Below are positions 1,259 to 24,589 of a stretch of 64,000 nucleotides of DNA, one piece after another (the stretch's first letter is position 1; each line of letters starts with the position of its first letter). The translations under genes were made by a program, and so were the position numbers. The DNA is taken from NCBI RefSeq assembly GCF_048593235.1, contig NC_133623.1, forward strand, positions 57,378,066-57,442,065, read 5' to 3'. Under the pieces are notes generated by a model. That model did no database searches. It was not told the origin of the DNA and saw only the letters and a list, made by a program, of their open reading frames with translations. This DNA is from Sminthopsis crassicaudata (taxonomy: Eukaryota).

Positions 1259-1495
1259 CTGCAGAGACAGGAGGGAGTCCTGGAGGCCGCTCGGCGTCCT
1301 CCCCTCCGCCCCCTTGCTGCGGGCCCTTGGCTCCATGACCGGGCCTGTCACTGCCCGGCAGATCCCCGGTGCTCCACCCTGTGCTTTCCCAGGCTGCTCC
1401 CACATCACCCCCTGTGCCCCGGTTGCCCTCTAGACCCCCCACCCGTCCTGGGACCGTCCGCCCCTCGCTCCGCATCCTCCCCCGGCCCCCGGTAC

Positions 1496-2916
<1,421 letters not shown>

Positions 2917-3156
2917 TCAGGAGGCAGGACGGGGCAAGGGTCTCTCCTCCGGGGTCAGAGCGGCCATGGGAGCCGCCCGAGGGCATAGTGCCCGGGAGGT
3001 GAGGGCGGGCACGGGGCTGGGGAGGGGCCCCGTCAGTCGCGCCAGGGGGAGCACGGAAGAGGGGGAGCCGGGCGGGCAGCGTCCTCGGAGGGCCGAGGGG
3101 GCTGTGGGGACAGGACCCTCCCACCCGTCCCTCTCCCCCGGACCCCGTCCCCAAAC

Positions 3157-3621
3157 CTTGACCCTGAAGGGACACCGTGTCTGGTCAACCAGCATGATGT
3201 TCTCCGGTTTGAGGTCAGCGTGGATGATGGCCAGTTCCTTGAGGCGGGCCAAGGCCCGGAGCACCTGCAAGGTCACCGTGCGGATGTGGCGGGCCGCCAG
3301 GGGCGCAAAATTGTTCTCCTTTTGGAACTCGAAAAGGTTCTGCTCCAGCAGCTCGAAGACCAGGTAAAACTTGAGGGCGTCGTGGAAGAACTCGAGGAAG
3401 CGGATGATGTGGGCCTCGTCCGGGTCCAGGCCCCGCATGCAGCGGAGCAGCTTCAGCTCGTTCTTGATGATGCGATTACGGTACGCGTCATTCTTCAGGA
3501 TCTTGATGGCCACCATCTCGCCCGTGCTCCGGCGCCAGCCCTTCGCCACCTCACCAAAGGTCCCCTTACCCAGGACCTCGATGATGTCATAGCAGTCGGT
3601 TTCAGACTGGATGGTGGCCAT
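3157..3621 (-). CDS. HIPK4: HIPK4 coding exon 1 (MATIQSETDCY...FRVK)
   Basis: GCCATGG Kozak start at 3621, GKGTFG loop, VAIK lysine, HADLKPEN; AAG|GTTTGG donor; 465 nt. Spliced total 628 aa. Confidence 0.96.
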
Positions 3622-4768
3622 GGCCCGGCCGCTGCCCTCGACCCGCCGCCGCCGAGGGCGCCCGCCCCGCCGCCGGCCCCGGGGCCCGAGCGGGGGAAAG
3701 AGAACCGCACTCGTGCCGCCCAGGGACAGCGCCCTCTCCGCCGCCCCGCCCCCCCCCTCTCTGGAGTGCGAAACTGCTGGGGCCTTCGCCCCTCCCCCCC
3801 ACCCCGGGCTCGGGATGAGCCCCCCCCCGGACCCCGATCGGTTCCGGGGTTGCTGAGCGGGATGGGTTCTGTTGTCGGAGACCCTCCTCTGGACCCTGAT
3901 GCAGAATGGACTGTCGTGTTCCAAGTAGGGCCTCTCCCCTCCCCCGATGGATGGCAGAACCCAGGGTGGGCAGTGGGCAGTGCCTGCAGGCTCGGGGCAC
4001 TTAGCCTTCCTCTGGATGGTAGGACCGGGCGACGGGAATCCGTTTCCCCTCCCCATTTGAAGAAGCCACCATTGGGAAGGTGTCTCTGCTAAGCCCGGCC
4101 CCAGAATTCTCTACTCATGCGGGGGGCTCGTACAGTCGGGGGCGCTGCGGGGGGAACTCCTCAGACCCAGGGTAGGATAGCTGCCCTCCGAGGCCTCATC
4201 CATCTCTGAGATTTTGCGATTCATGTGGTCCGCCTTGAGCCAGCTTCCGAGTCCCCTCCTGAGGAGCGGGGAAGAGAGTACTGAGCCCCCTAGAGGAGCG
4301 GGGCCCCGCTAGAGAAGACGGGCCCTCTGGGCCCCCCGAAAGCCCCGTGGGTGCTGCCAACCCAGGCAAATGGTCTCATCCAGAATGCCAGGAAAAGAGG
4401 TTCCTGGAAGGGGGTCCCCGCTGAGTCAGCTCTGCCATCTGCCCCTACCCGCCCCACCCCACCCCCACCATACCAACTGAGCTCCCCGGCCTCCTGGCTT
4501 ACAATGCCCCAAGCCCCGCCCCGCCCTGCCCTGCCCTGCCCTCCCAGTCACTGGGCAGGCACAAGAGTGCCGTCCAGCTCGGACACCCAGCAACCGGATG
4601 ACCCTCTCCCTCCTCCCCCCCAGGGAATATGAGTTAACAAAGAGCCTCCTGTGGACTCACACACATACCCCTCCCCGGATTCTACCTGGTGCCTGGGCTG
4701 GGGAGCAGGGGCGGGGGCCTTCCTCTGGGCTGGGAGTCCTGAGACACAGTCCCGGGGCTTCCCAAAAC

Positions 4769-8639: not shown

Positions 8640-11600
8640 CTAGACAGCTGCCGTTGGGGCCCCCTCCATCTTGGCAGTGCCCAGTGGGTTTGGCTCGCTG
8701 TCGGTTTCCGTCTCGGAGAAGCCCACTTTAGGCAACCGGACCCTGAACATTCCCTCCTCCTCCCCACCTGGGGCTCCCTTGGGCACCCCCTGTGCCTTGG
8801 GGCTCAGTGACACCTTAGGGAAGTGGAATTTGGGGGACTTGTCACCAGGGGACCTCTGGGATCCCTCAGGCTCCCCTTCCTCCTTGGAGCGGCTGGAGAA
8901 GGGTGAGCGGAAACGAGCGGGCCGCAAGGCAGCAAAGGGGCTGAGATCCACCCCCACCGGGCTCCGGCCGAACTCGGGCTCCTGTTCCGGGCCCTTGTAC
9001 AAAGAGGCAAGTTCCACTTGGGGCAGGCCCACACGGGCAAAGCGGCCCGTGGAGGCACCATTGTGCAGGGCTATGGCGGCCCCCTCCTCCTCTCCCGGGG
9101 AGCCGCTCCCGTTGGTGTTGGGGGAGTCCCCCTTGGCAAAGCCCACTTTAGGCAGTCTTAGCTTGGGACTCCGGACCCGGCCGCCGGCCTCGCCACCCCC
9201 TTCTCCAGAACCGCCCCAAGACAACAGGAGACTAGACTTCCCTGACCCTGGGGAGACTTTGGCGGCTCCCTCGCCGTCCTTGCCCGTCCTCTTTGCCAGT
9301 TTCTTCCCCTTGGCCTTCTCCCCATCCTCTCCCTCTTCTCTCCCTAGCAAGAGCCCAAATCGAGGCAATTTGATTTTGGGCCTGCGCCCGGCCTCGCTTT
9401 CCAGCCCGTCCCCTGCCACCTGGTACTCGGCGTGGCTGCCCATGGGCGGTGGGGAGAGCTCCACCTCGGGCATCCAGGAGCGGAGCTTGCTCCCTTCTGG
9501 GGGGGTGCCTGCCTGGGCAGCTCCTGGCTCCACTGTGAAGCCCACATCTGGAAGGGACAGGTGGAAGGGATGGTCAGGGGCTGCTCCGGAGGGGCCCCCA
9601 GGCTGCCCATCACCTTCCCCACTGGCTTTGAAGGTGGGCATCTTCAGCCGGAACCTCTCCTCTCCCGCGGCTTCGGCCACCGCCCGCCCCTCTCCAGCCA
9701 CCGGGCCATCCTTGGTCCCCTCTGTCTTGTGCCCGAGCCCCACATCCAGTTCAAGCTGGGGCACAGTCACACCGGGCATCTTGAACACTCCCTCTCCCAC
9801 GAGAATCTCCCCTCCCTCTACTTGGGCACCAGGGAGAGAAAGGTCCACCTGGGGCAGCTGTACCCGGAAGCCCCCGCCGCCCACGCCACCCTCTGTTGCT
9901 GCAGCCCCCCCTTCCTGCTGTCTCTGAGAAGCTCTGACTTCAGCCCCTGTCCCTTCACCAACAACCCCCCCAAAACCAGTCAGCTCTACCTGGGGTACTG
10001 TGATTCCCAGTGTGGACACCGTCACCTCTGCCTTGTGGCTCCTGACATCCTTCTCGGAGACCTCCGTGCCTACCTGCTCTGCCCCCCTCGCCGGCCCGGG
10101 CACCGAGATCCGAAAGACCGGCAGCTTGACCTCTCCCCCTGCCATCTCCACCTCCCCTCCCTCTTCCTGGGTCATCAGCGTAGGCAGCTCCACTTGGGGT
10201 ATTTTCAAGGCAGCGTGCCCTACGTGTAATTTTTCCTCAGGGCCGCCCTGGTCCCCATCCTCCACCTCCCTTCCCCGCGCCAACCCAAACGAGGGCATCT
10301 TAAACTTGGGCATCTTCACCTTAGCCTCCCACGCCCGGCCTTTGCTTTCTGCTTCCCCCTCCCCCAGCACCATCTCTCCAGCTTCTGCATCCTTGCTCTT
10401 GGCCCCAAACTTGGGCAGTGCAAACTTGGGACCTTTGAGTTTGACATCGGGCAGCTCGCTGGGCACCTCCACTTTGCCTGTGGGCAGTGGGACATCCAGG
10501 CTGAGTTGGGGGACAGTGACCCCCAGGGCAGACAGCAGAGGGGCCTCCCCAGATTCCTTGGGCTCCGCCTCGACGCCCGTCCGGACCTTGGGGAAGCTGA
10601 TGCCGAACTTGGATGTCTTCAGTTTGGCCCCACGGACGCCCCCTTCGCCGTCCCCTTCCCCCCTTCCCACCTTGGGGGCCGAAAGACCAAACTTGGGCAG
10701 GGAAAACTTGGGCGATTTGAGTTTGGGCTCGGCCACTTCCAGCTTTCCCTCTGCCTCTCCTTCGGGAAGCTTTGGGGCGGCTATCTCGACAGCCGGCAGC
10801 ACCAGGCTGGGCATCTTGAACCCGGCCTCCCCCACCTCCACTGCATCGAGAGAGATCCCAGAAAGCTCTGCGGGAAGCTTGGGAGCGGGGGCGGCTCCCT
10901 TTGGGGGTGCTGCCTCAACTCTAAGGGGCCCTTGGAGCCCGGCTCCGGACAGCTCCAGCTCCACCGAGGGCAACGTAACAGATGGGAACGCGAGCCGGGC
11001 CTCGGGCCCCTTGCTGGCCAGCTCGCGGCTGGGCGACGGTTCCCTGCGCCCTGTGCCCTCGGGGCTCACCACCCCAACCTTGGCCCGGGGGGGAGATCCC
11101 ACCCGTCCCAACTTGGGTATGGACATCTTGGGCAATTTGAAGCCAAAGTCCAGGCCCTCCGCCCGCTCTGCCCCACGGGTTGCCATGGACTCTTGGGAAA
11201 GCTGCACATCTGGGGCTTTGGGCATCTTCATCTCGGGCATCTTAGGGAGGTGCATCTCGGGCATCTTGGGCATCTGCATCTCAGGCACTTTGGGCAGCTG
11301 AACATCTGGAAGGTGCACATCTGGGATGGACATGTCCGGGACTTTGGGCAGCTTCATCTCGGGCACTTTGGGAAGCTGTACTTCTGGAAGGTGCACATCT
11401 GGGATGGACATGTCCGGGACTTTGGGTAGCTTCATCTCGGGCACTTTGGGAAGCTGCACTTCTGGAAGGTGCACATCTGGAATGGACATGTCCGGAACCT
11501 TGGGCAGCTTCATCTCGGGCACTTTGGGAAGCTGCACATCTGGAAGGTGCACATCTGGGATAGACATGTCCGGGACCCTGGGAAGCTTCATCTCTGGAAC

Positions 11601-12998
11601 TTTTGGGAGCTGCACCTCTGGGAGGTGCACATCTGGGATAGACATGTCCGGGACCTTGGGAAGCTTCATCTCGGGCAGCTTCATCTCGGGCACTTTTGGG
11701 AGCTGCACATCTGGAAGGTGCACCTCTGGGATGGACATGTCCGGGACCTTGGGCAGCTTCATCTCGGGCACCTTTGGGAGTTGGACCTCTAGGAGCTGCA
11801 CCTCTGGGATGGACACTTCAGGCCCCTTGGGCATCTTCATCTCGGGCAGTTTCATCTCGGGCACCTTTGGGAGCTGCACCTCCGGGAGCTGCACCTCGGG
11901 GATGGACACCTCCGGTCCCTTGGGCATCTTCATCTCGGACACCTTTGGGAGCTGCACCTCTGGGAGGTGCACCTCTGGGATGGAGACTTCGGGCCCTTTG
12001 GGCAGCTTCACCTCAGGAACTTTGGGCAGCTTCACCTCTGGGGCTCTGGGCAGCTTTGCTTCGGCCCCGGACACCCCAATGCCAAAGGAGGGCATCTTGA
12101 TCGTGGGCAGTTTCAGCTTGCCTTCCACGGGGGGCTCGGGTGCAGCTGGCCGGGACTCCAGCAGGGAGAGCCCAAAAGTGGGCATGCGCAGCTTGGGCCT
12201 CTTGGCCCTGGCCTCAGGACTGGCCCTCACTCCTTTGCCGGCCTTCCCCTCGCCCTCCAGCCCCACCCCTTCCTTCCCCCGAGCGCCAAAGCGGGGAAAG
12301 GTGAGCCAGGGAACCTTCAAGGCAACCTCGGGCCCTTCTTCCCGGACTTCAGCCGGGGCTCCGGGCAGGGCCAGGTCCACCTCCATGGATGGCACAGACA
12401 CATCGAGGGCGGGGGCTGCCATGGCGACGCCCTCTCTGGCCTCTAGGCATGGCAGTTTGGTGAGGGGAGGCAGCTCGACCTGGGGTACCTGGATGCTCCC
12501 TGGGGCCACCTCAGGCACAGGGGCTGCTGGGGCCGAGAGGCCAAATGTGGGAAGGTGGAGGCTAAACCCCGCGCCCGGAGGCTCTGGAACTTCAGCCACC
12601 ATCTCAGCACCTGCCCTCTGGGGCCCGACCAGCTCCAGCTGAGGGGTTCCAAAGCGTGCACCCAAGGATGGCTCCTCTCCAGGCAGGGCACCCTCCTCCT
12701 TGGCCTTCCTGCTCCCCAGGAAGGGGATGGCGGCCAGGGAAGACACCAGGGTGGCCGGCTCAGCTGGAGGAATGGGGCCCGCCACCTCCCTCACCCTCAG
12801 CCGGGGGAGACGCAAACGTCGGTGGGCGGGGGCGGCCAGCGCGGGCCCCGGGGCCACCTCGGCCTTTGCCCGTCGCAGCCTCGAAAACTTGGGGAAGGAG
12901 AATTCAACATCAACAGGGACCAGGTCTGAGGGGATTCCCGGGGCCCCAGGCACAGCTAGGACCTTCTTCTTCTTCACTGGGGACAGGCTCTGGATGTT
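8640..12998 (-). CDS. PRX: Periaxin, large last coding exon ([12 protein letters not shown]...MEGAPTAAV*)
   Basis: ctctccccAG acceptor, 4359 nt open; basic NLS/DRP2-binding region, PEVK-like repeats, AHNAK-like region, C-terminus like mammalian L-periaxin. Spliced L-form 1579 aa. Confidence 0.97.
11200..12070 (-). repeat. PRX: Coding tandem repeats of periaxin (pentapeptide [13 protein letters not shown]; 78-bp/26-aa higher unit)
   Basis: CTGGGATGGA recurs at 11321 and 11399 (period 78); unit [26 protein letters not shown]. Confidence 0.95.
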
Positions 12999-13591: not shown

Positions 13592-13924
<333 letters not shown>

Positions 13925-15635: not shown

Positions 15636-16003
15636 CCCTCTTCCTACCCCTAGTCATGCATTTCCTTAGAATTCCCTGACGGCATTCCCTCCCTCCCCCC
15701 CCAGCTATCCTAAGATGGTGATTTAGGCTTGACCCGTCTTGGTCTACACAGCCCCGGACATTGTGCCGTAGAATCTAGAGCAAGAAAGGATCTCAGAGGC
15801 CGTTGAGTTCAACTCCTTCCTTTCATAGACGGGGAAACTGAGGCACAAGTAACTGGCCCGAGCTGGAGACAAAACCCAGGATCTGTGACTTCAAGCCTCC
15901 ATAGTCCAGCTGACATGGCCGCCACTCCCAGGGTTCTTAAGTCTGGAAATTTTACTCTCTGCCATGCCCTGTGCCCGCCACCCCTTCTCCCAGCCCCCCG
16001 TAC

Positions 16004-16160
16004 CTTCCTGTAAACTGAGGGTCTTGGCGGCCGGGGAATCTTTGAGCAGTTCCTTGATGAAGATTCCTTCCTTCCCGCCTCCTGCCACATTGATGCCGCT
16101 GACCCCCGTCTCAGCCTCGGTCTCCACGATGATCTCCACCAGCTCTGCCTTCCTGAGCTC
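16004..16160 (-). CDS. PRX: Periaxin coding exon, first half of the PDZ-like domain ([16 protein letters not shown]...LSLQE)
   Basis: cccccAG acceptor, G|GTACGG donor, 157 nt phase 0-1. Confidence 0.96.
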
Positions 16161-16390: not shown

Positions 16391-16417
16391 CTCAGCGCTC
16401 CTACTCCTGGCCTCCAT
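16391..16417 (-). CDS. PRX: Periaxin canonical start exon (MEARSRSAE)
   Basis: GGCACCATGG Kozak, GAG|GTACAC donor, 27 coding nt. Confidence 0.95.
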
Positions 16418-16519
16418 GGTGCCTCCAGAGGTTGAGGCTGGAGCCCCAAATGCAGCCCACCTCTCTCCTTTCTTCTGTAAAACCTGCTTCAGCTCTGCAT
16501 GGAGCAGAAGCTTCTGGGC
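16418..16519 (-). other. PRX: 5' part of the PRX start exon (102 nt, open in frame: AQKLLLHAELKQVLQKKGERWAAFGAPASTSGGT)
   Basis: cctcccactgcAG acceptor (AG at 16521-16520); hand translation has no stop up to the ATG. Confidence 0.75.
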
Positions 16520-17168
16520 CTGCAGTGGGAGGAGTAAGGGGTTGTGAGGGAGAGCACTGGTCTCATAAGGGACCAGAGAACAGGAGCAGGTAAGGGCTGG
16601 GGCGGGGGGGGGGAGGGTGTGGGACAGGGAGCACCCCCCCCACTAATGCTTAAGGAGATGTAAGATAGGACCTGGGGAAATATCCAGGACAAGCCGGCCC
16701 TTTAAAAGGATTGGGGACTTGCCCAGGATCCCTTGCACTTGGAGCTGGAGGAAATCCAGCCCAGCCCTCTAACTCCATTGGGAGAGATGGACAGACCCAG
16801 GTCCTCCTGAGAGAGCACCGACTTCTAGGCAAGGGAGATGGGTTTAAACTGGGCTCTGGGGCTCCCCCAGCCCCCTCTCAATTTTAAGCTGTGTGGCGTC
16901 GGAAAAGTCGATCGACCTTTCTGAGTCTCGGGTCCCTCATTTGCAAAATGGGATTCGTATTTGTATGGCCTCCCTCACGGGGTTGGACAGATGAGGAAAC
17001 AAAGGCACAGGACATAAGTGACTTGCTCGGGGAGCCTAGCCCGGGGGTCCACCTCCCCCGCCTCCCGTTGCCTGCTCCGGTGGGGGCCCAAGCACCAATG
17101 GGGGTCCAGGAAGAAGACCCAGCTTCCGAGCAGCCCCGTCTCCTCCCCCTAGTAGTTGTGATTCTCAC

Positions 17169-17261
17169 CGCCCTCTCGGCGCAGTGCCCGGCTGCGGGGG
17201 GGCGCTGGGCCCAGAGCACTTGGGGGTCCGCCGCTCTCCCCTTCTCTCCTGGATCACTCGC
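17169..17261 (-). other. PRX: Predicted upstream PRX exon, 93 nt
   Basis: cttcctcccccacAG acceptor and GCG|GTGAGA donor; open in phase 0-0. Confidence 0.65.
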
Positions 17262-17398
17262 CTGTGGGGGAGGAAGCAGCAGCCAGAGACTGAGGAAGAG
17301 GCTCAAGCAGCAACTGAGAACAAGCCTTTAGGTGCCTGCGGTGCCGGGCCCGGCCTGCCCTGTCCTCTGAGCAAGGCGGAGGGTCCTCGGCTACTCAC

Positions 17399-17454
17399 CT
17401 CAGTGCCGACTCCTGCCCCGGGAAGGTTCTTGGTCTGAGACTGCCTGGGGGACC
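17399..17454 (-). other. PRX: Predicted upstream PRX exon, 56 nt
   Basis: cctgctctcttcccAG acceptor and GAG|GTGAGT donor; open in phase 1-0. Confidence 0.7.
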
Positions 17455-18390
17455 CTGGGAAGAGAGCAGGTGATGAGGAGGCCTTCCGGCCAGCACTTAG
17501 CTGGGATCTGAGCTCCCAGCAAGTCCTCATGGGATGGGAGGGATCACAGAGCGGAGGATATTTGCCTAGAGTCACATAACTACTTTCGGGGGGCCCAATA
17601 TGGAATCCGAGCAGGCTCCCATCTTGGAATCTCCTCACTGGGAGCTCCCAGCAAGTCCTCACAGGATGTGAATCAGAGAGGGGAGGATATTTTCCAGAGC
17701 CTTGGGCTTTCCCATTCTCCCCCGCTGCCTGCCCTCTGGATGAGGTAGAAATCGGGAGACGCAGGGGCAGGGAGAAGAGTACAAGCTGAGAACGGGGAAA
17801 AGACCGGGGAGAGGGAAGGATACCGCCCGACACCCACAAAATAGCCTCTGAAGCCTAGCTTGGCTTAGCCCCAGAGAACACAACTGGCAGAAGGAGCCAA
17901 GAACAGCAGAGATCAGAGGCCGGGCTCTTTCTACAGGTGGGGAAACTGAGGCACGAGGAGGCTAAATGACAGGCTTGTAGCTCCAGAGCTGGACGGGCTC
18001 TCGGTATCCACACACTAAAACACGATTTTACAGAGGAGGACAAAGCTGAGAAGGTGAAGCACTTGCCCAAGTTTCCGCAGGCGGGGAGCAGCAGAGATGG
18101 GAAGATTTGAGCCAAAGAATTAGTTTTCTAACAGACAGAGCCGCCCCAGAGTCACGGGCTGGTTCATGAGGTGGCGGGGTCCCCGTCCGTGGGGCCTTCA
18201 GGTAGAGAGGGTGATTTGTTTGCCCAGGAAAGGGCTAGATTCCTGCCTGCCTGCCCAGAGCCTGACCTAGGCAAAGGCTCTCAGCCTCCCAGCCTCAGTT
18301 TCCTCATCTGCAAAGTAAAGGGGTTGGACGACGTAGATCTCGAGTCTCCCCCTCTGAATCCTGGCCTTCTGGGCAAGGCTGGTGACTCAC

Positions 18391-18574
18391 CCCCCCCAGA
18401 CCTCTCCCGAGGCGCCGGCCCGAAGGTCCGCTCTAGCTCTGGGACTTGGTCTCTGGGCCACTCCCTTGCCCCCACCTGGGCTCCCCCCCCTCCTGGCAAG
18501 CCCATCCCCCAGTGGGGTTGGCATCCTGGCTTCGCCCCCACTCTGGCTGAAAGGTCAGCTTTCACAAGGCCCAT
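18391..18574 (-). other. PRX: Candidate alternative PRX first exon with in-frame ATGs (18574, 18505)
   Basis: G|GTGAGT donor leaves phase 1 in ORF 18281-18643; AAAATGG and GGGATGG Kozak contexts; TSS unknown. Confidence 0.35.
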
Positions 18575-21467
18575 TTTCAGGAACAATAGGGCCCCTCCCC
18601 ACCCCTCCCTGCTGGTCAAATTCCCACCCCCTCCAAACCGCACAAAGCCCCTTCAGAGCCCACCTCCAGCAGGCCGATGGATCCCTGGGAGCATTTTGGT
18701 GACCCAGGGGCCCCTCTCCCCCTCCAAGGGCCTCTCCGCCAACACAGAGCCTCAGGCCCGTCCTCCCTCCCCTTCCCTTCCCCTCCCCTCCCCTCCCCTC
18801 CAGACTGGAGGACCAACAAACAGACCAGTTGCCTGAGTTACAGGATACCTGGCACTAGAAATGTGATCTGCAGCAAGTGCCTGCCCCTTTCTGGGCCTCG
18901 GTTTCCCCAGCTGTAAAGTGTGCTGGCTGGTATGGGGCTGACTCCCTCCACAAGCTAAGGAGACCGTGATTATCCCTGTTTATAGATGAGGAAACTGAGG
19001 CAGGAAGAAGTAGCAGGCCTGGGTCACAGCTAGCACGTGAACCTGAGGCTGTCCACAAGGAGATATGTCTTTCAGGAGGCCAGTGTTGGCACCCGGGTGG
19101 CCCTTGAGACCTGGGCCGTCCATCACGACCCCTCGTCTGTCTCCCTCCCTCTCTGGCCCCCACTCCTGTCTCTCTCTCTAGATCAGTCTCTGAGCGCGGC
19201 TGCTGCTCTCCCAGCTGTTTCCTCTTCTGGGGCCCCAAACCCCAGCCCCAGGTGCCACAGTGCCCGTCACTCGGAGGCAGAGCTAGAATAGCTCCCCGGG
19301 ATCCCAGGGAGGGTCCCAACTGGACTCCGATGCCCCGGCAGGCAGGGGCAGGGACAGGAAGACCAGCCGGGCGGGCAGGCAGGGTGGGGAGCAGAGGAAG
19401 ACTTCTGTCCTTAGCCTAGGTGGGTGGGGCAGGACATCCCCTTTTCTTCCGGCCTCCCCTCCCTTTGGGCCCGGCCACACCCTCTCGGTACCCTCGGTCT
19501 AGCTCTTACAAGGAGAGAAGAGGGGGCAGGAAGTCCACCTTGTCTCAGTTCCTGCCCTTGCCTGTCTTTGACTCACCCCGGATCCAGTTCAGCCCTTCCA
19601 CTTGTACAGAAGGGGGAAATTGGAGCCACCAGACCAGGAGCCTTAGACCTAGAACGGCCTTTAGGAACCACCTGATGCAAGGAGGAGCTTATTTTCCAAC
19701 TGATAATTGCACTGCAATATCATTGCTTTCCAGTGCAATCCCCTTTTTATTCTACACGGTTAAGAACAGGATTCTGGGAAATGGTCCCTAGTTTTCACCA
19801 GGCTGGCCAAGAAGGAAGACCCCGGTCTAATCCAGTTCCTCCATTCCCAGAAGAGGCTGACGGCTCCCACGGCTAAGTGGGCTGGGTGGCCACAGTGCCC
19901 AGAGATTGAAGTCGGGGTCCCCAACTCCAACCTCGGGGCCCTTGGCCATCCCAGGGCAAGCCGGAGTCAGGCCGTACTGGCCATTATTTTACATGATTCA
20001 CGTCATGATTAAGCGCGAGCGTAAATAAAGGAATTGCTTGAGAGAATCCTAGAATATTTGAGCTAGGAGGGACTCCTGGGTAGTAGAGCCCATCCCTCCT
20101 GCTACACACAGCCTGTGTTTGGGGAACCCCCCCTTGGAAGGGACCTCCAGTCCTGGCTTAGGAGGCTAAGTGATCCAAGGCGGGCCTTAGAGACAGCCCG
20201 GTCCAAAAGCCCTTGAGTCACAGGGGAGGGAACAGAGGCCCAGAAAGTTAAGGCATTTGCCTCCAGGAAGTGAACCTCTGAAGCAGGGTTTGCCCCCAGC
20301 GCTCTCCACAGCAGTCCCAGAAGCCTTTCCACAGGGTCATGCTGCCGGGCCCAAACCCGGGTTCCCCAACGCAGGGGAGGATTCGGGTCTCAGTTGGCTT
20401 CCCTCAAATAGGAGATGGAGAACTTCTGAGAAGCTCGTGTTACAAGGCAGGGAAGAGGCGGTAAATCTGGACCCCTGAGATTCTCTGACCCTGTGGGACA
20501 AGCCCACTGCTTCCCCTTGCCCAGAGAAAGATAGTGCAGTGCAGTGGCAAGAGCTGCCAACTTGGGATTCTGAGAGCTTGCCCTGGAAGGGGGGCTTTGT
20601 TGCCAGCTTTTTGACTTGGATAATGACTGCCTCTCCTGGGTCATCTGCGAAGGAGGGTTCTCGATTAGCTGGCACGGAAGACCCCCTAAAAGCCCAGGAT
20701 CCTGAGTACCCCTGCTCTGACACCGCCTAGGCAAGTGGGGAAGATGCTTCTGAACCATGTGGGTGAGGAGACTGATTTCAGCTCTCCCCGTTCAGATCCT
20801 GCTTCTGCCCTTACAAAAGCTAGTCCCTTTCCCAGGCGCTCCATTCCTCCTATTTAAAAAAATGGGGAGGGGGGGATCAGACTGAGGCTTTCAATCCCCT
20901 CAGAAGTGCCAGATTCAGGTTGTCCCCACCCTGGTTGCGGGTTCTGGAGAAGTTGCCCTTTCCTCCATTGATGGCCCAAAAAACATGGATGGGCAAGGGG
21001 GACGGTGGGAGGGCTCCCCCATTGGAGGGTCTAAGGTGGGGCCTGGAGGCCGCTGGCTTGGCGGAAGTCTGGGGTCCCAATAAAGGAGCCGGCCCAGTGG
21101 CCAGTTCCTCGCCCCCAGCTTCTTCCCCTCAGTTCTCCGTCACTCCCGTGTCTGAGCCTAGAACTTAGAGAACCTTGACTCTGGAGCATTCTCTTCTCAG
21201 GGCTTTGCCCACCTGGTCTCCACCCAGCTTCCCCCCCCCAGGGTATAGGTATCCAGCCCTCAGCCTTTCCTTCCAAGGTCTCGGCATGCTGGCCCCCAGC
21301 TCTCTCTCCCAGAATTTAGGCTTCAGCCTCCATCACCTCTCCAGCCCAGGCCCAGGTACCTGCCCCTCAAACTTCTCCCCCCTGGCCCGGGCATCCCAGC
21401 TCCCTGGGCTCATCTTCAGATCTCGGGGCTCTGAACCCACAGCTGCTCCCACAGGGGGCTCCCTTAC

Positions 21468-21530
21468 CGTCCGCCTGGACCGCCGGCTCTGGATGCCCTG
21501 CCTGCTCTGCCCAAGCCAGGGGAAAAGGAA
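21468..21530 (-). other. PRX: Candidate non-coding PRX first exon (distal promoter)
   Basis: ACG|GTAAGG donor at 21467-21466 below a G-rich, EGR/SP-like promoter-type stretch (21530-21700); 5' boundary approximate. Confidence 0.35.
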
Positions 21531-22204
21531 CTGGCCCGGGAAGGGGGGCAGGGGGGTGGTGGGAGGGCTCATCTCATTGGCAGATGTCATGAGGGGCTGG
21601 GAATGGGGGAGGGGTGGCTCTCCCTCCCCCCATCCCCCTCTAGTGCATGCCCCCCCCCTTTCTCTATTCTTTGCAAGGGGAGGCTGCTGTCAAAGGCGCT
21701 GGGCTTGGTGCTGGGGAGCTTGGGACCCGGCTGAAGGAGCCTGGCCTTTGAACCCTCCTCGTACACTTACTGATCCTGGGCAAGTCAACATTAAAAATCT
21801 TTTTCTTCTGATTTTTTTCTCTTGTGGTTTTCCCTTTTGTTCTGATTTTTCTCTCCCAACATGATTCATAAAGAAATATGTATTTTAAAAAAATGTACAG
21901 GTATAATCAGAAAATTAAAACACCAAAAAAAAAAAAAAAAATCTGAGCCTGAGTTAACTCATCTACAAAATGGGAATAATAGCATCTGTTCCATTGGAGC
22001 CGGGGAGTTTGAGTGGGATAAGATGGAACGGGGCGGGTCTGGATTTCATTGGCACAGAAAGTCCCAGGTGAGGAAATTCCTTCTCCTGCTGCAGATCAGC
22101 ACGCTCACAGGCACCATAGCCTTAGAGGCTTGCCCAGCAAAGGTAATTAGCAGGGATTTGCCCGGAGTCGCCATTCAGACCCAGCTTGAACCCAAGACTT
22201 CTTG

Positions 22205-23470: not shown

Positions 23471-24589
23471 CCCTCAGATCCTCTGCATGCTCTTGAGGAA
23501 TGCCTTCTCTCACTGCCTCAGTTTCCCCGGATGTTAATGCCCATTTTACTAGCATGACCACCTAATAACAGCCATCCAAAATGATATTTTCTGTCAATTT
23601 AAGAACTTTCCGGGACCCAGTCCCATTTAATCCCACAGCAGCCCCGTAACCACTCCATTTCACAGAGGAGGAAGCTGAGTCTCAGGCTGTAGGGGGACTG
23701 TAGGTGAGGGTCCAAGGTGGGGCTGAAGCCCAGGACTTGCTGACCGGGTACTCCGGGCTCCCAGTCTGCTGGTTCCCGAGCCCCTTGGGGTTCCCAGGGT
23801 TTGAGGATGGAATCAAGTGAGGAGGAATGTGGAGACCACTGGGGAGATGGGGGGCGGCCTCCTTATCCTTTGCCCACCAGGCTCCTGCCTGTGCCAGAAG
23901 TCTCGGCCCTTCATTCCCAGGCTATCCTGCTATCTGATGCAGGGAAGGTCACTGGAGGGGGGGTGGTGGGGGCCAGAACCTGAGGTTTGTGTTCCAATTC
24001 TGCCTGTGTTATGGAATCTTGAGCACTTTGCTACTCTGAGCCTCAATTTTCCTTTCAGAGAATGGGAATAATACCTTATAGATTGGCTGAGCTCCTGAGG
24101 GACTCTACTAGGACTAAGGTGGAGCCCAAGGGCTCCTGGAGGAAGAGCTTGCCCTGGGCTTTTCCGAGCTCTCCTCCCTCTGCTATCCCATTCTCTCCCA
24201 GACTCACCTGGTCCCGCGGATTGGCACAAGGAGCAGAAGTAGGTCCACATGGCCCCGTCCTGGGCAGAGCTCCCTGTCTGTGGCTCCCCGCCTGGCTGAA
24301 GCTCCTCTGCGCCCCAGGGAGAGGGGCCCACGAGGTCTGGGGGATTAGCTCAAACTGCCTGTCAGCAGCTTTCGGGCACTCGCCATTGTCCCTGTCCAGG
24401 GGACCGCTGCCGTGGCTGCCCTGCTCCTGCACTTACCCAGCACGCCCTGGCCCAGGACCCCCGGATCCAGCAGTCTAGAACTCAGACCTGGATGAACAAA
24501 AGAATGCCTAATGTCTAAACTGGGGAGGCCCGAAGAGTGGAGACTGTTAAAGACAGAGACCTTAGAATATAGAACATGGAATGCCGGAA

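What the first reader, a model, noticed from the sequence alone, without database searches (positions are those of the whole stretch)
16418..18574. Hidden N-terminal extension of periaxin: the 5'UTR exons form one open frame with upstream strong-Kozak ATGs
Predicted exons 17454-17399 (56 nt), 17261-17169 (93 nt) and 16519-16418 (102 nt) have consensus splice sites and join without a stop in frame with the canonical ATG: G-SPRQSQTKNLPGAGVGTE / ASDPGEKGRAADPQVLWAQRPPAAGHCAERA / AQKLLLHAELKQVLQKKGERWAAFGAPASTSGGT / MEARSRSAE. They need a phase-1 upstream exon. The G|GTGAGT donor at 18390 gives exactly phase 1 in an ORF with ATGs at 18574 (AAAATGG) and 18505 (GGGATGG), adding 145 or 122 aa. KLLLHAELKQVLQKK looks like an amphipathic helix rather than UTR. 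This suggests promoter choice switches between canonical and N-extended periaxin, for example nerve versus lens or endothelium. I recall, unverified, that a longer human isoform has been annotated.
Basis: partly seen in the sequence, partly recalled or inferred. Interest (0 to 1): 0.7.

Follow-up and report, generated by a model that had tools for sequence, protein, structure and literature searches.

The report
Conserved N-terminal extension of periaxin

Summary
The window holds PRX (periaxin) of the fat-tailed dunnart on the minus strand.

The ATGs at 18574 and 18505 and the donor at 18390 lie on a conserved intron-1 element with two SOX core motifs. The donor is not conserved, and no protein model retrieved here uses it.

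The real first exon lies at 24250-24208. It has a conserved ATG, 43 nt and a CAG|GTGAGT donor in phase 1. RefSeq XP_074134536.1, from this same scaffold, matches the exon 1-2-3-4 translation over 107 of 107 residues.

Across dunnart and seven eutherians:
- Exon-length differences preserve the frame.
- A codon model gives omega 0.47-0.54 in this frame (2dlnL 13-20) and about 1.0-1.4 in both control frames.
- Constraint sits in the exon 1 peptide (MWxYxCSLC) and an LLHAELKxVL segment, which also occurs in ray-finned fish periaxins.
- The frame is broken in naked mole-rat and Galemys, and exon 1 was not found in a muroid.

The scan had no earlier periaxin note.

The parts
24208..24250 (-). Coding part of PRX exon 1. 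ATG at 24250-24248, then 14 codons plus one base (MWTYFCSLC...), with donor CAG|GTGAGT (GT at 24207-24206) in phase 1.
   Evidence: Sequence. tblastn with eutherian extended isoforms. blastn orthology to exon 1 of six eutherian loci. Identical to the start of RefSeq XP_074134536.1. omega 0.215, 2dlnL 10.4.
24350..24352 (-). First in-frame stop (TGA) upstream of ATG 24250, with no in-frame ATG between. ATG 24250 therefore opens the ORF.
17399..17454 (-). Exon 2, 56 nt (44 nt in eutherians). Linker with little amino-acid constraint.
   Evidence: omega 0.98.
17169..17261 (-). Exon 3, 93 nt (99 nt in eutherians). Frame-neutral cassette that some eutherian models skip. Weakly constrained linker.
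   Evidence: omega 0.77.
16418..16519 (-). Leader part of exon 4, 102 nt. Encodes the conserved LLHAELKQVL segment.
   Evidence: omega 0.34, and 0.185 for the 20 helix codons. The motif is shared with fish periaxins.
16391..16417 (-). Canonical start ATG (optimal context caccATGG) and MEARSRSAE, to the end of exon 4.
16498..16500 (-). The only other ATG in the leader. It is out of frame, opens a 3-codon ORF, has a weak context, and is conserved in all eight species because it lies inside the His-Ala codons of the helix.
16002..16160 (-). Exon 5 (first part of the PDZ domain).
   Evidence: Pfam PF00595 on P0121.
13709..13903 (-). Exon 6 (rest of the PDZ domain). Read-through into intron 6 (13708-13592) gives the S-periaxin tail of XP_074134536.1.
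8640..12998 (-). Large repeat-rich exon 7 of L-periaxin. The ORF runs 13115-8640; the exon start is estimated from the [12 protein letters not shown] alignment.
18391..18574 (-). Present as sequence, but not supported as an exon.
   Evidence: present. (donor and ORF not conserved). (not used by the RefSeq model).
18400..18680 (.). Conserved non-coding block in intron 1, about 1.2 kb upstream of exon 2. Two SOX core motifs (18647-18642, 18587-18582) and TGACCTTT (18557-18550) keep their positions in the dunnart and six eutherians. Candidate Schwann-cell enhancer.
   Evidence: Published EGR2/SOX10-responsive Prx intron element (PMC3413122); identity with it is inferred only.

Best explanation
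**What it is.** The stretch is the 5' end of the periaxin gene (PRX) of a dasyurid marsupial, on the minus strand. Exons 1-3 and the first 102 nt of exon 4 are described in the literature as untranslated. Together they form one 98-codon reading frame.

**Structure of the frame.**
- It opens at a conserved ATG in exon 1 (24250).
- It leaves exon 1 in phase 1 at 24208.
- It runs through exon 2 (17454-17399), exon 3 (17261-17169) and exon 4 (16519-16418) into the canonical ATG (16417).

**Proposed product.** A ribosome starting at the exon 1 AUG would make periaxin with an N-terminal extension, in both the S- and L-forms. The extension has two constrained modules joined by a poorly constrained Pro/Gly/Ala-rich linker (exons 2 and 3):
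- a cysteine-bearing N-terminal peptide, MW-x-Y-[LF]-C-S-L-C;
- a predicted helix, AQ-x-x-LLHAELK-x-VLQ-x-KGE, about 45 residues before the PDZ domain.

**Choice of start (inferred).** The exon 1 AUG has G at -3 and T at +4. The canonical AUG is in an optimal context. Leaky scanning on one mRNA, or variation in the transcription start within exon 1, would therefore yield both the extended and the classical protein.

The ATGs at 18574 and 18505 with donor 18390 are not part of this frame. They lie on a conserved intron-1 regulatory element.

**Shown versus inferred.**
- Shown: the exon structure, the open frame, its conservation, frame-specific selection, and identity with a RefSeq model.
- Inferred: that the extension is translated, how the two starts are chosen, and any function. 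The two cysteines suggest S-palmitoylation and membrane anchoring, as in PSD-95. That rests on my own knowledge and was not tested.
For: 1. **Exons.** All exons have AG/GT sites, and the joined frame is open.
2. **Annotation in this species.** RefSeq XP_074134536.1 (Sminthopsis crassicaudata, same 89,927,176-bp scaffold) matches the exon 1-2-3-4 translation over 107 of 107 residues. It then follows exons 5 and 6 and the retained intron.
3. **Eutherian structure.** The same architecture occurs in six eutherian loci (the muroid lacks exon 1). ATG to donor is 43 nt, as in the dunnart. Exons 2, 3 and the exon 4 leader are 44, 99 and 99 nt against 56, 93 and 102 nt in the dunnart, so every length difference is a multiple of three.
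4. **Unbiased sample.** Three loci chosen through models without the extension (Trichechus, Galeopterus, Bos) still have the full open frame.
5. **Codon model.** GY codon model, leader frame: omega 0.483 (5 eutherians, 2dlnL 13.3), 0.466 (6 intact species, 20.4), 0.543 (all 8, 16.6). Control frames +1 and +2: omega 0.95-1.44, not significant.
6. **Where the constraint lies.** Exon 1 omega 0.215 (2dlnL 10.4). Helix codons 0.185 (12.7). Exons 2 and 3 about 0.8-1.0.
7. **Stop counts.** Zero stops in this frame in 7 of 8 species, against 1-5 in each other frame.
8. **Fish.** Periaxins of paddlefish, sardine and a catfish carry ER..QK.KLH[AS]ELKQVL at the same distance from the PDZ domain, inside their annotated CDS. 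BLASTP of the dunnart extension against the paddlefish N-terminus gives E = 6e-6.
9. **Other mammals.** Predicted isoforms with the extension occur in primates, bats, carnivores, pangolins, perissodactyls, ruminants, a sirenian and a possum.
10. **Human variant.** c.-243G>A is described as the last base of 'non-coding exon 1' (PMC12957058). This fits 44+99+99 = 242 nt between exon 1 and the ATG, assuming the human exon lengths equal those of the eutherians read here (no human DNA was examined).
Against:
- There is no ribosome or peptide evidence.
- The frame is not universal. Heterocephalus has two in-frame stops. Galemys has a 7-nt duplication that shifts the frame. No exon 1 was found within 6 kb in the muroid Scotinomys.
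- Overall omega of about 0.5 is mild, and exons 2-3 show no detectable amino-acid constraint.
- Annotation pipelines pick the longest ORF, so the predicted isoforms are not independent proof of translation.
- If the transcript starts far upstream, two short uORFs (ATG 24577 and 24386) precede the ATG.
- The AlphaFold model is poor (mean pLDDT 42).
- The literature treats these exons as non-coding.
Confidence: 0.7

Rival explanations
1. An alternative promoter or first exon at 18.4-18.6 kb (ATG 18574 or 18505, donor 18390) splices to exon 2 and supplies a 145- or 122-residue extension.
For: The ORF, the two ATGs in good Kozak context and a G|GTGAGT donor in the right phase exist. RNA reads were not available to exclude its use.
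Against: - The stretch aligns to a conserved intron-1 block in six eutherian loci. There the first ATG falls in a GGAATG motif, indels break the ORF and the donor has no counterpart.
- The RefSeq model of this species uses exon 1 at 24250-24208.
- The possum and devil models use other upstream exons (23804-23697 and 21558-21466), never this one.
- A conserved exon 1 with the same phase already explains the frame.
Confidence: 0.05
2. The leader is truly non-coding. The exons are conserved as RNA or DNA elements, the open frame is incidental, and annotation pipelines simply report the longest ORF.
For: - In one species the open frame has an 11% chance probability.
- Exons 2-3 have omega near 1.
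- The frame is broken in Heterocephalus and Galemys.
- The clinical and cell-biology literature uses the MEARSRSAE start.
Against: - omega is below 1 only in this frame, with both other frames at or above 1 on the same nucleotides.
- Synonymous changes are in excess at the Leu, Cys, Tyr, Pro and Gly codons of exon 1.
- All net exon-length changes over about 160 My are multiples of three, except Galemys.
- The ATG and the 43-nt distance to the donor are conserved.
- The helix motif is coding sequence in fish.
Confidence: 0.15
3. A relic. The extension was the ancestral vertebrate N-terminus. In therians the internal MEARSRSAE start has taken over, and the upstream frame is decaying: it is still mostly open, but translated little and dispensable.
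For: - Fish proteins include the motif and lack an internal Met at the mammalian position.
- There are independent disruptions in three eutherian lineages.
- Bird and reptile models start close to the PDZ domain.
- The exon 1 ATG has the weaker context.
Against: Purifying selection is detectable within eutherians alone (omega 0.48, 2dlnL 13.3). It is strong in two modules (0.19-0.22), which a decaying relic should not show.
Confidence: 0.1

Closest known systems
RefSeq XP_074134536.1, 'uncharacterized protein LOC141549109' of Sminthopsis crassicaudata (P0121)
   Same: Same scaffold. Its first 107 residues are identical to the translation of window exons 1-4, and the rest follows exons 5 and 6 and the retained intron 6. 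It is the extended form of S-periaxin.
   Different: It is an automatic model, named 'uncharacterized' and not linked to periaxin by name. It carries no statement about conservation, selection or translation.
Predicted N-extended periaxin isoforms of eutherians, for example XP_054566602.1 (Eptesicus fuscus), XP_036903351.1 (Sturnira hondurensis), and P0037, P0088, P0024
   Same: Same four-exon architecture, same phase, same MW.Y.C.LC start and LLHAELK helix. The extension is 95 residues, or 62 when exon 3 is skipped.
   Different: Exon lengths are 44/99/99 nt rather than 56/93/102 nt, and the linker sequence has diverged. Some models start instead at an ATG just inside intron 1 (MLTLFFLE...), which looks like a product of unspliced transcripts.
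Classical L- and S-periaxin as described in rodents and man (start MEARSRSAE, PDZ domain at the extreme N-terminus)
   Same: Same gene, same PDZ domain, same exon 7 repeats, same S-form by intron 6 retention.
   Different: The classical description counts exons 1-3 as non-coding (PMC12957058). In the two rodent loci read here the extension is unavailable: no exon 1 ATG was found in Scotinomys, and Heterocephalus has two stops.
Periaxin of ray-finned fishes (Polyodon P0135, Sardina P0130, Pangasius P0127)
   Same: About 115-130 residues precede the PDZ domain. They include ER..QK.KLHAELKQVL at the same spacing and a cysteine-bearing N-terminus (MC.CL...).
   Different: There the region is ordinary annotated CDS, with no internal start at the mammalian position. 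Outside the helix the sequences do not align. Exon structure was not examined.
PSD-95/DLG4 N-terminal isoforms (from my own knowledge, not tested here)
   Same: A PDZ scaffold protein whose alternative 5' exons give different N-termini, one of them a short di-cysteine palmitoylation motif that targets the protein to membranes. This is a functional analogy for the MW.Y.CSLC peptide.
   Different: No sequence relationship was shown. Palmitoylation of periaxin is a hypothesis only.

Membership tests
Periaxin gene (PRX) | Large repeat-rich last exon homologous to L-periaxin | tested here: met
   The 1491-aa ORF 13115-8640 hits periaxins of Antechinus (88%), Sarcophilus (85%) and more than 100 mammals at E = 0.
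Periaxin gene (PRX) | N-terminal PDZ domain encoded by exons 5-6 | tested here: met
   tblastn places exon 5 at 16160-16002 and exon 6 at 13903-13709. Pfam PF00595 on P0121, E = 7e-7, above the cut-off.
Periaxin gene (PRX) | S-form by retention of intron 6 | tested here: met
   The C-terminal 38 residues of XP_074134536.1 are the read-through of 13708-13592.
Periaxin gene (PRX) | Synteny with a HIPK4-like kinase and a PLD3-like gene downstream | tested here: inconclusive
   A protein kinase gene and a phospholipase D gene (Pfam families only; the HIPK4 and PLD3 names are my inference) follow PRX in all fetched loci. The ORFs at 1430-4092 of the window were not examined.
N-terminally extended proteoform from an upstream in-frame AUG | Upstream AUG present in the mature mRNA and in frame with the main start | tested here: inconclusive
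   The frame is shown, and a RefSeq transcript model contains the AUG.
N-terminally extended proteoform from an upstream in-frame AUG | No stop codon between the two AUGs | tested here: met
   Zero stops in the dunnart, Smutsia, Trichechus, Galeopterus and Bos. Not met in Heterocephalus (2 stops) or Galemys (frameshift).
N-terminally extended proteoform from an upstream in-frame AUG | Coding-type conservation of the extension | tested here: met
   omega 0.47-0.54 with 2dlnL 13-20 in this frame only. Modules at 0.19-0.22. In-frame length changes. The fish motif.
N-terminally extended proteoform from an upstream in-frame AUG | Direct evidence of translation (ribosome footprints, peptides) | not testable with these tools
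   No paper in the library holds the peptides QLLHAELK or MWGYLCSLC.
   In six eutherian loci the block aligns, but the donor aligns to gaps and indels break the ORF.
   Not used by XP_074134536.1, the possum model P0008 or the devil model P0165. RNA reads were unavailable.
Schwann-cell intronic enhancer of Prx (EGR2/SOX10-responsive) | Conserved non-coding block in an intron of PRX with SOX sites | tested here: met
   A block of about 200 bp at 18680-18400. Two SOX cores and TGACCTTT keep their positions in the dunnart and six eutherians. EGR-like sites are variable.
Schwann-cell intronic enhancer of Prx (EGR2/SOX10-responsive) | Identity with the rat fragment bound and activated by EGR2/SOX10 | not testable with these tools
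   PMC3413122 gives only rat genome coordinates. The primary paper (PMC2605513) is not held.
N-terminal S-palmitoylation motif | Cysteines within the first ten residues, flanked by hydrophobic residues, and conserved | tested here: met
   Cys6 and Cys9 are invariant in the seven species with exon 1. Two of the three fish N-termini (Sardina, Polyodon) start MC.CL.
N-terminal S-palmitoylation motif | Acylation shown | not testable with these tools
   Hypothesis from analogy only.

The most novel reading that the evidence does not exclude
Periaxin's true ancestral N-terminus is the exon 1 start. It has a lipid-anchor-like di-cysteine peptide and a helix conserved from ray-finned fish to mammals, placed ahead of the PDZ domain. 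In most therians this extended protein is made alongside, or in some tissues instead of, the textbook form. The textbook start was fixed on rodents that have lost the upstream start. Human '5' UTR' variants of PRX, such as c.-243G>A, would then be coding changes as well as splice changes.
Probability: 0.3. Interest if true: 0.7.

Novelty: new member of a known kind. Interest (0 to 1): 0.5.

Why it matters
- **Clinical reading of variants.** Periaxin is a myelin and lens scaffold protein, and its loss causes Charcot-Marie-Tooth disease 4F. Clinical reports still draw exons 1-3 as non-coding (PMC12957058, 2026). If the extension is translated, variants there can be missense, nonsense or start-loss changes.
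- **Protein function.** The PDZ domain would not sit at the extreme N-terminus in that proteoform, which bears on its dimerisation and membrane targeting.
- **Model organisms.** Rodent models may be blind to the extended form.
- **What is new here.** The sequence itself is not new, because automatic annotation in many mammals, including this dunnart, already carries it. What is added is the evidence that it is selected as protein, where its real start lies, and that its core motif is as old as bony vertebrates.

Tried and rejected
- **RNA reads.** No read evidence exists in this report. Those places were sent to no search tool afterwards and were masked in later local BLAST databases.
- **Marsupial genomic DNA.** Look-ups for Antechinus, Monodelphis and Trichosurus gave no record or no DNA because the files are too large. 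Two further look-ups found no record. Marsupial comparison therefore rests on proteins only (P0008, P0165).
- **Structure.** The AlphaFold2 model of residues 1-225 on a 25-sequence alignment was too poor (mean pLDDT 42) for any fold search.
- **Pfam.** No family was found for the extension. A DUF6919 match at E = 0.026, below the cut-off, was dismissed.
- **Amphipathic helix.** Rejected on a hydrophobic moment of 0.04-0.22.
- **Devil model's first exon.** It maps to 21558-21466, but in the dunnart it has a stop and no in-frame ATG, so it was rejected as a start here.
- **A human RefSeq extended isoform.** My memory of one could not be verified. No paper holds the accession numbers I tried, so it is not used as evidence.
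- **Human sequence.** No human contig was fetched or compared. A human protein appeared in a hit list and was only listed with the other hits (N-terminus printed), not analysed further.
- **Joined model.** The joined exon model was built only inside local scripts, for translation and codon analysis. It was never sent to a search tool. Searches used stored protein ids or single references.
- **Unused searches.** The large representative-protein search and the third word search were not used, because the answer did not depend on them.
Full report
**What the window holds.** The region is the 5' half of PRX (periaxin) on the minus strand.
- The 1491-aa ORF at 13115-8640 matches periaxins of Antechinus (88%), Sarcophilus (85%) and more than a hundred other mammals at E = 0.
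- That was confirmed here. RefSeq protein XP_074134536.1 of Sminthopsis crassicaudata sits on a scaffold of the same length as the window's and is encoded exactly by the window.

**The observation.**
- Exons 17454-17399 (56 nt), 17261-17169 (93 nt) and 16519-16418 (102 nt) have good acceptors and GT donors.
- Joined, they read without a stop into ATG 16417 and MEARSRSAE.
- The ORF with ATGs at 18574 and 18505 ends one base before G|GTGAGT (GT at 18390), so the stated lengths of 145 and 122 codons are right.
- Taken alone this is not remarkable. Shuffles of the G+C-rich leader keep the required frame open in 11% of trials, and a donor of matching phase can always be found in a kilobase of intron.

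**Where the frame really starts.**
- Many predicted eutherian periaxins carry about 95 extra N-terminal residues. These begin MWGYLCSLC and contain AQRQLLHAELKLVLQQKGE just before MEARSRSAE.
- tblastn with these placed the start at window 24250-24208. The sequence there is ATG, 14 codons (MWTYFCSLC...), one further base, then CAG|GTGAGT. That is phase 1, which is what exon 2 needs.
- An in-frame TGA lies 34 codons upstream with no ATG between, so this ATG opens the ORF.
- The full extension is 43 + 56 + 93 + 102 = 294 nt, or 98 codons.
- A word search with the possum N-terminus then returned XP_074134536.1 of the dunnart itself. It has 263 residues, and its first 107 are identical to the translation of exons 1-4 as I had joined them. 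The rest follows exon 5 (16160-16002), exon 6 (13903-13709) and read-through into intron 6.
- It is an N-extended S-periaxin, filed as an 'uncharacterized protein'.

**Comparison of genomic loci.** Marsupial assemblies gave no DNA. Seven eutherian loci were fetched: giant pangolin, manatee, colugo, a singing mouse, yak, naked mole-rat and Pyrenean desman.
- In the six with exon 1, ATG to donor is 43 nt, as in the dunnart.
- Exon 2 is 44 nt and exon 3 is 99 nt in all seven, and the exon 4 leader is 99 nt in five (yak 102, desman 106 with a 7-nt duplication). All sites are AG/GT.
- Against the dunnart the differences are +12, -6 and +3 nt, all multiples of three. Yak has one extra codon.
- The frame from the exon 1 ATG to the canonical ATG is open in the dunnart, pangolin, manatee, colugo and yak. 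Three of these loci were chosen through models that lack the extension, so this is not an ascertainment effect.
- It is broken in the naked mole-rat (TGA in exon 3, TAG in exon 4) and in the desman (a 7-nt tandem duplication in exon 4).
- In the muroid Scotinomys, exons 2-4 are open, but no exon 1 was found in the 6 kb upstream.
- The other two frames carry 1-5 stops per species.

**Test for selection on the protein.** The model was GY + F1X4 on a fixed species tree.

| Species set | omega, leader frame | 2dlnL against omega = 1 |
|---|---|---|
| Five eutherians | 0.483 | 13.3 |
| Six species with intact frames | 0.466 | 20.4 |
| All eight | 0.543 | 16.6 |

- The same nucleotides read in frames +1 and +2 give omega 0.95-1.44, with no significant departure from 1.
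- The eutherian set has almost no gaps, so the protein-guided alignment cannot explain the result.
- By segment:

| Segment | omega | 2dlnL |
|---|---|---|
| Exon 1, codons 2-14 | 0.215 | 10.4 |
| Exon 2 | 0.98 | not significant |
| Exon 3 | 0.77 | not significant |
| Exon 4 leader | 0.34 | 12.2 |
| The 20 helix codons | 0.185 | 12.7 |

- The picture is two constrained modules joined by a free linker. Exon 3 is a frame-neutral cassette that some models skip.

**Depth of conservation.**
- Short periaxin models of paddlefish, sardine and a pangasiid catfish have 115-130 residues before the PDZ domain.
- In all three, about 45 residues before the domain, stands ER..QK.KLH[AS]ELKQVL. The dunnart has ERAAQKLLLHAELKQVL.
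- BLASTP of the dunnart extension alone against the paddlefish N-terminus gives E = 6e-6.
- Two of the three fish proteins (sardine and paddlefish) begin MC.CL, again with cysteines at the very start. They have no methionine where mammals start the classical protein.
- Bird and reptile models start near the PDZ domain.
- The helix segment is thus coding sequence in fish and is kept in the mammalian 'UTR'.

- blastn of 18700-18380 against the eutherian loci hit one syntenic place in intron 1, 1.0-1.5 kb upstream of exon 2, in six of seven loci.
- The alignment shows a block of about 200 bp. Two SOX core motifs (window 18647-18642 and 18587-18582) and TGACCTTT (18557-18550) keep their positions in all seven aligned species.
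- ATG 18574 aligns with a GGAATG motif of the eutherians. Downstream, indels destroy the ORF, and the GTGAGT donor aligns to gaps.
- An EGR2- and SOX10-responsive element in a Prx intron is published (PMC3413122). Whether it is this block could not be checked.

**How it probably works.**
- The exon 1 ATG has G at -3 and T at +4. The canonical ATG sits in caccATGG.
- Between them there is only one other ATG. It is out of frame, opens three codons, has a weak context, and is conserved because it lies inside the His-Ala codons of the helix.
- One mRNA could therefore give both proteins by leaky scanning. Transcription starts on either side of 24250 would do the same. Neither was tested.
- The helix is predicted (residues 57-87) but at low confidence in a poor model, and it is not clearly amphipathic.
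- The conserved Cys6 and Cys9 suggest a lipid anchor by analogy with PSD-95. This comes from my own knowledge and is untested.

**Known or new.**
- The protein sequence is already in public automatic annotation for many mammals and for this species.
- The literature searched here does not discuss it. No paper holds its peptides, and none combines periaxin with an N-terminal extension of this kind.
- A 2026 clinical report calls exon 1 non-coding while describing c.-243G>A at its last base. That position fits the 242-nt distance found here in other eutherians, and in the extended frame it would be the first base of codon 15.
- No human DNA was examined.

**Limits.**
Transcription, splicing and translation in the dunnart are therefore inferred from the RefSeq model and from conservation.
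- Those places were sent to no search tool afterwards.
- The joined exon model was used only inside local scripts and was not sent to any search.

Noticed in passing
window 18400-18680: Block of about 200 bp in PRX intron 1, conserved between the dunnart and six eutherians. Two SOX core motifs and TGACCTTT keep fixed positions. Candidate Schwann-cell enhancer, possibly the published EGR2/SOX10-responsive Prx intron element.
   Followed up: partly
L006 9686-9784 and 9902-10027 (Heterocephalus glaber): The leader frame carries two in-frame stops (TGA in exon 3, TAG in exon 4), although exon 1 with its ATG is intact. This is an apparent lineage-specific loss of the extension.
   Followed up: partly
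L007 8327-8459 (Galemys pyrenaicus): A 7-nt tandem duplication (GAGCCTG) in the exon 4 leader puts the upstream frame out of register with the canonical ATG. It may be a real loss or a draft-assembly error.
   Followed up: no
L004 1-6070 (Scotinomys teguina): No counterpart of exon 1 or its ATG lies within 6 kb upstream of exon 2, although exons 2-4 are open. No muroid protein in the hit lists carries the extension. This may be why the rodent-based literature starts periaxin at MEARSRSAE.
   Followed up: partly
window 24577 and 24386 (minus strand): Two upstream ATGs open short ORFs of 20 and 13 codons, the second in a good context (acaATGG). They would act as uORFs if the dunnart transcript starts as far upstream as the devil and possum models imply.
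   Followed up: no
window 23697-23804 and 21466-21558 (minus strand): Pieces of intron 1 that a possum Gnomon model (P0008) and a devil GenBank model (P0165) use as extra or alternative 5' exons. The second ends in a phase-1 G|GTAAGG donor in the dunnart, but has a stop and no in-frame ATG there.
   Followed up: partly
many eutherian proteins; L001 about 12356-12613; L004 9995-10090: A third N-terminus, MATPRRPPQ joined to ELRR..., replaces MEARSRSAE in models from mouse, cattle, squirrels and others. It is read from the sequence directly upstream of exon 5, which suggests an alternative start inside intron 4.
   Followed up: no
L001 10001-10016, L002 about 9536-9551 and other loci: The models starting MLTLFFLE... 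or MLLFLE... begin at an ATG in the polypyrimidine tract just upstream of the exon 2 acceptor. They are probably artefacts of unspliced or intron-1-initiated transcripts.
   Followed up: partly
window about 18250-18350 and 16900-16965 (minus strand): Stretches with the ...GATGAGGAAACTGAGGC... signature typical of MIR-type SINEs, judged from memory of the repeat consensus.
   Followed up: no
window 1430-4092: Several long overlapping ORFs in very G+C-rich DNA downstream of PRX, where the other species' loci have a protein kinase gene (probably HIPK4). Not examined.
   Followed up: no
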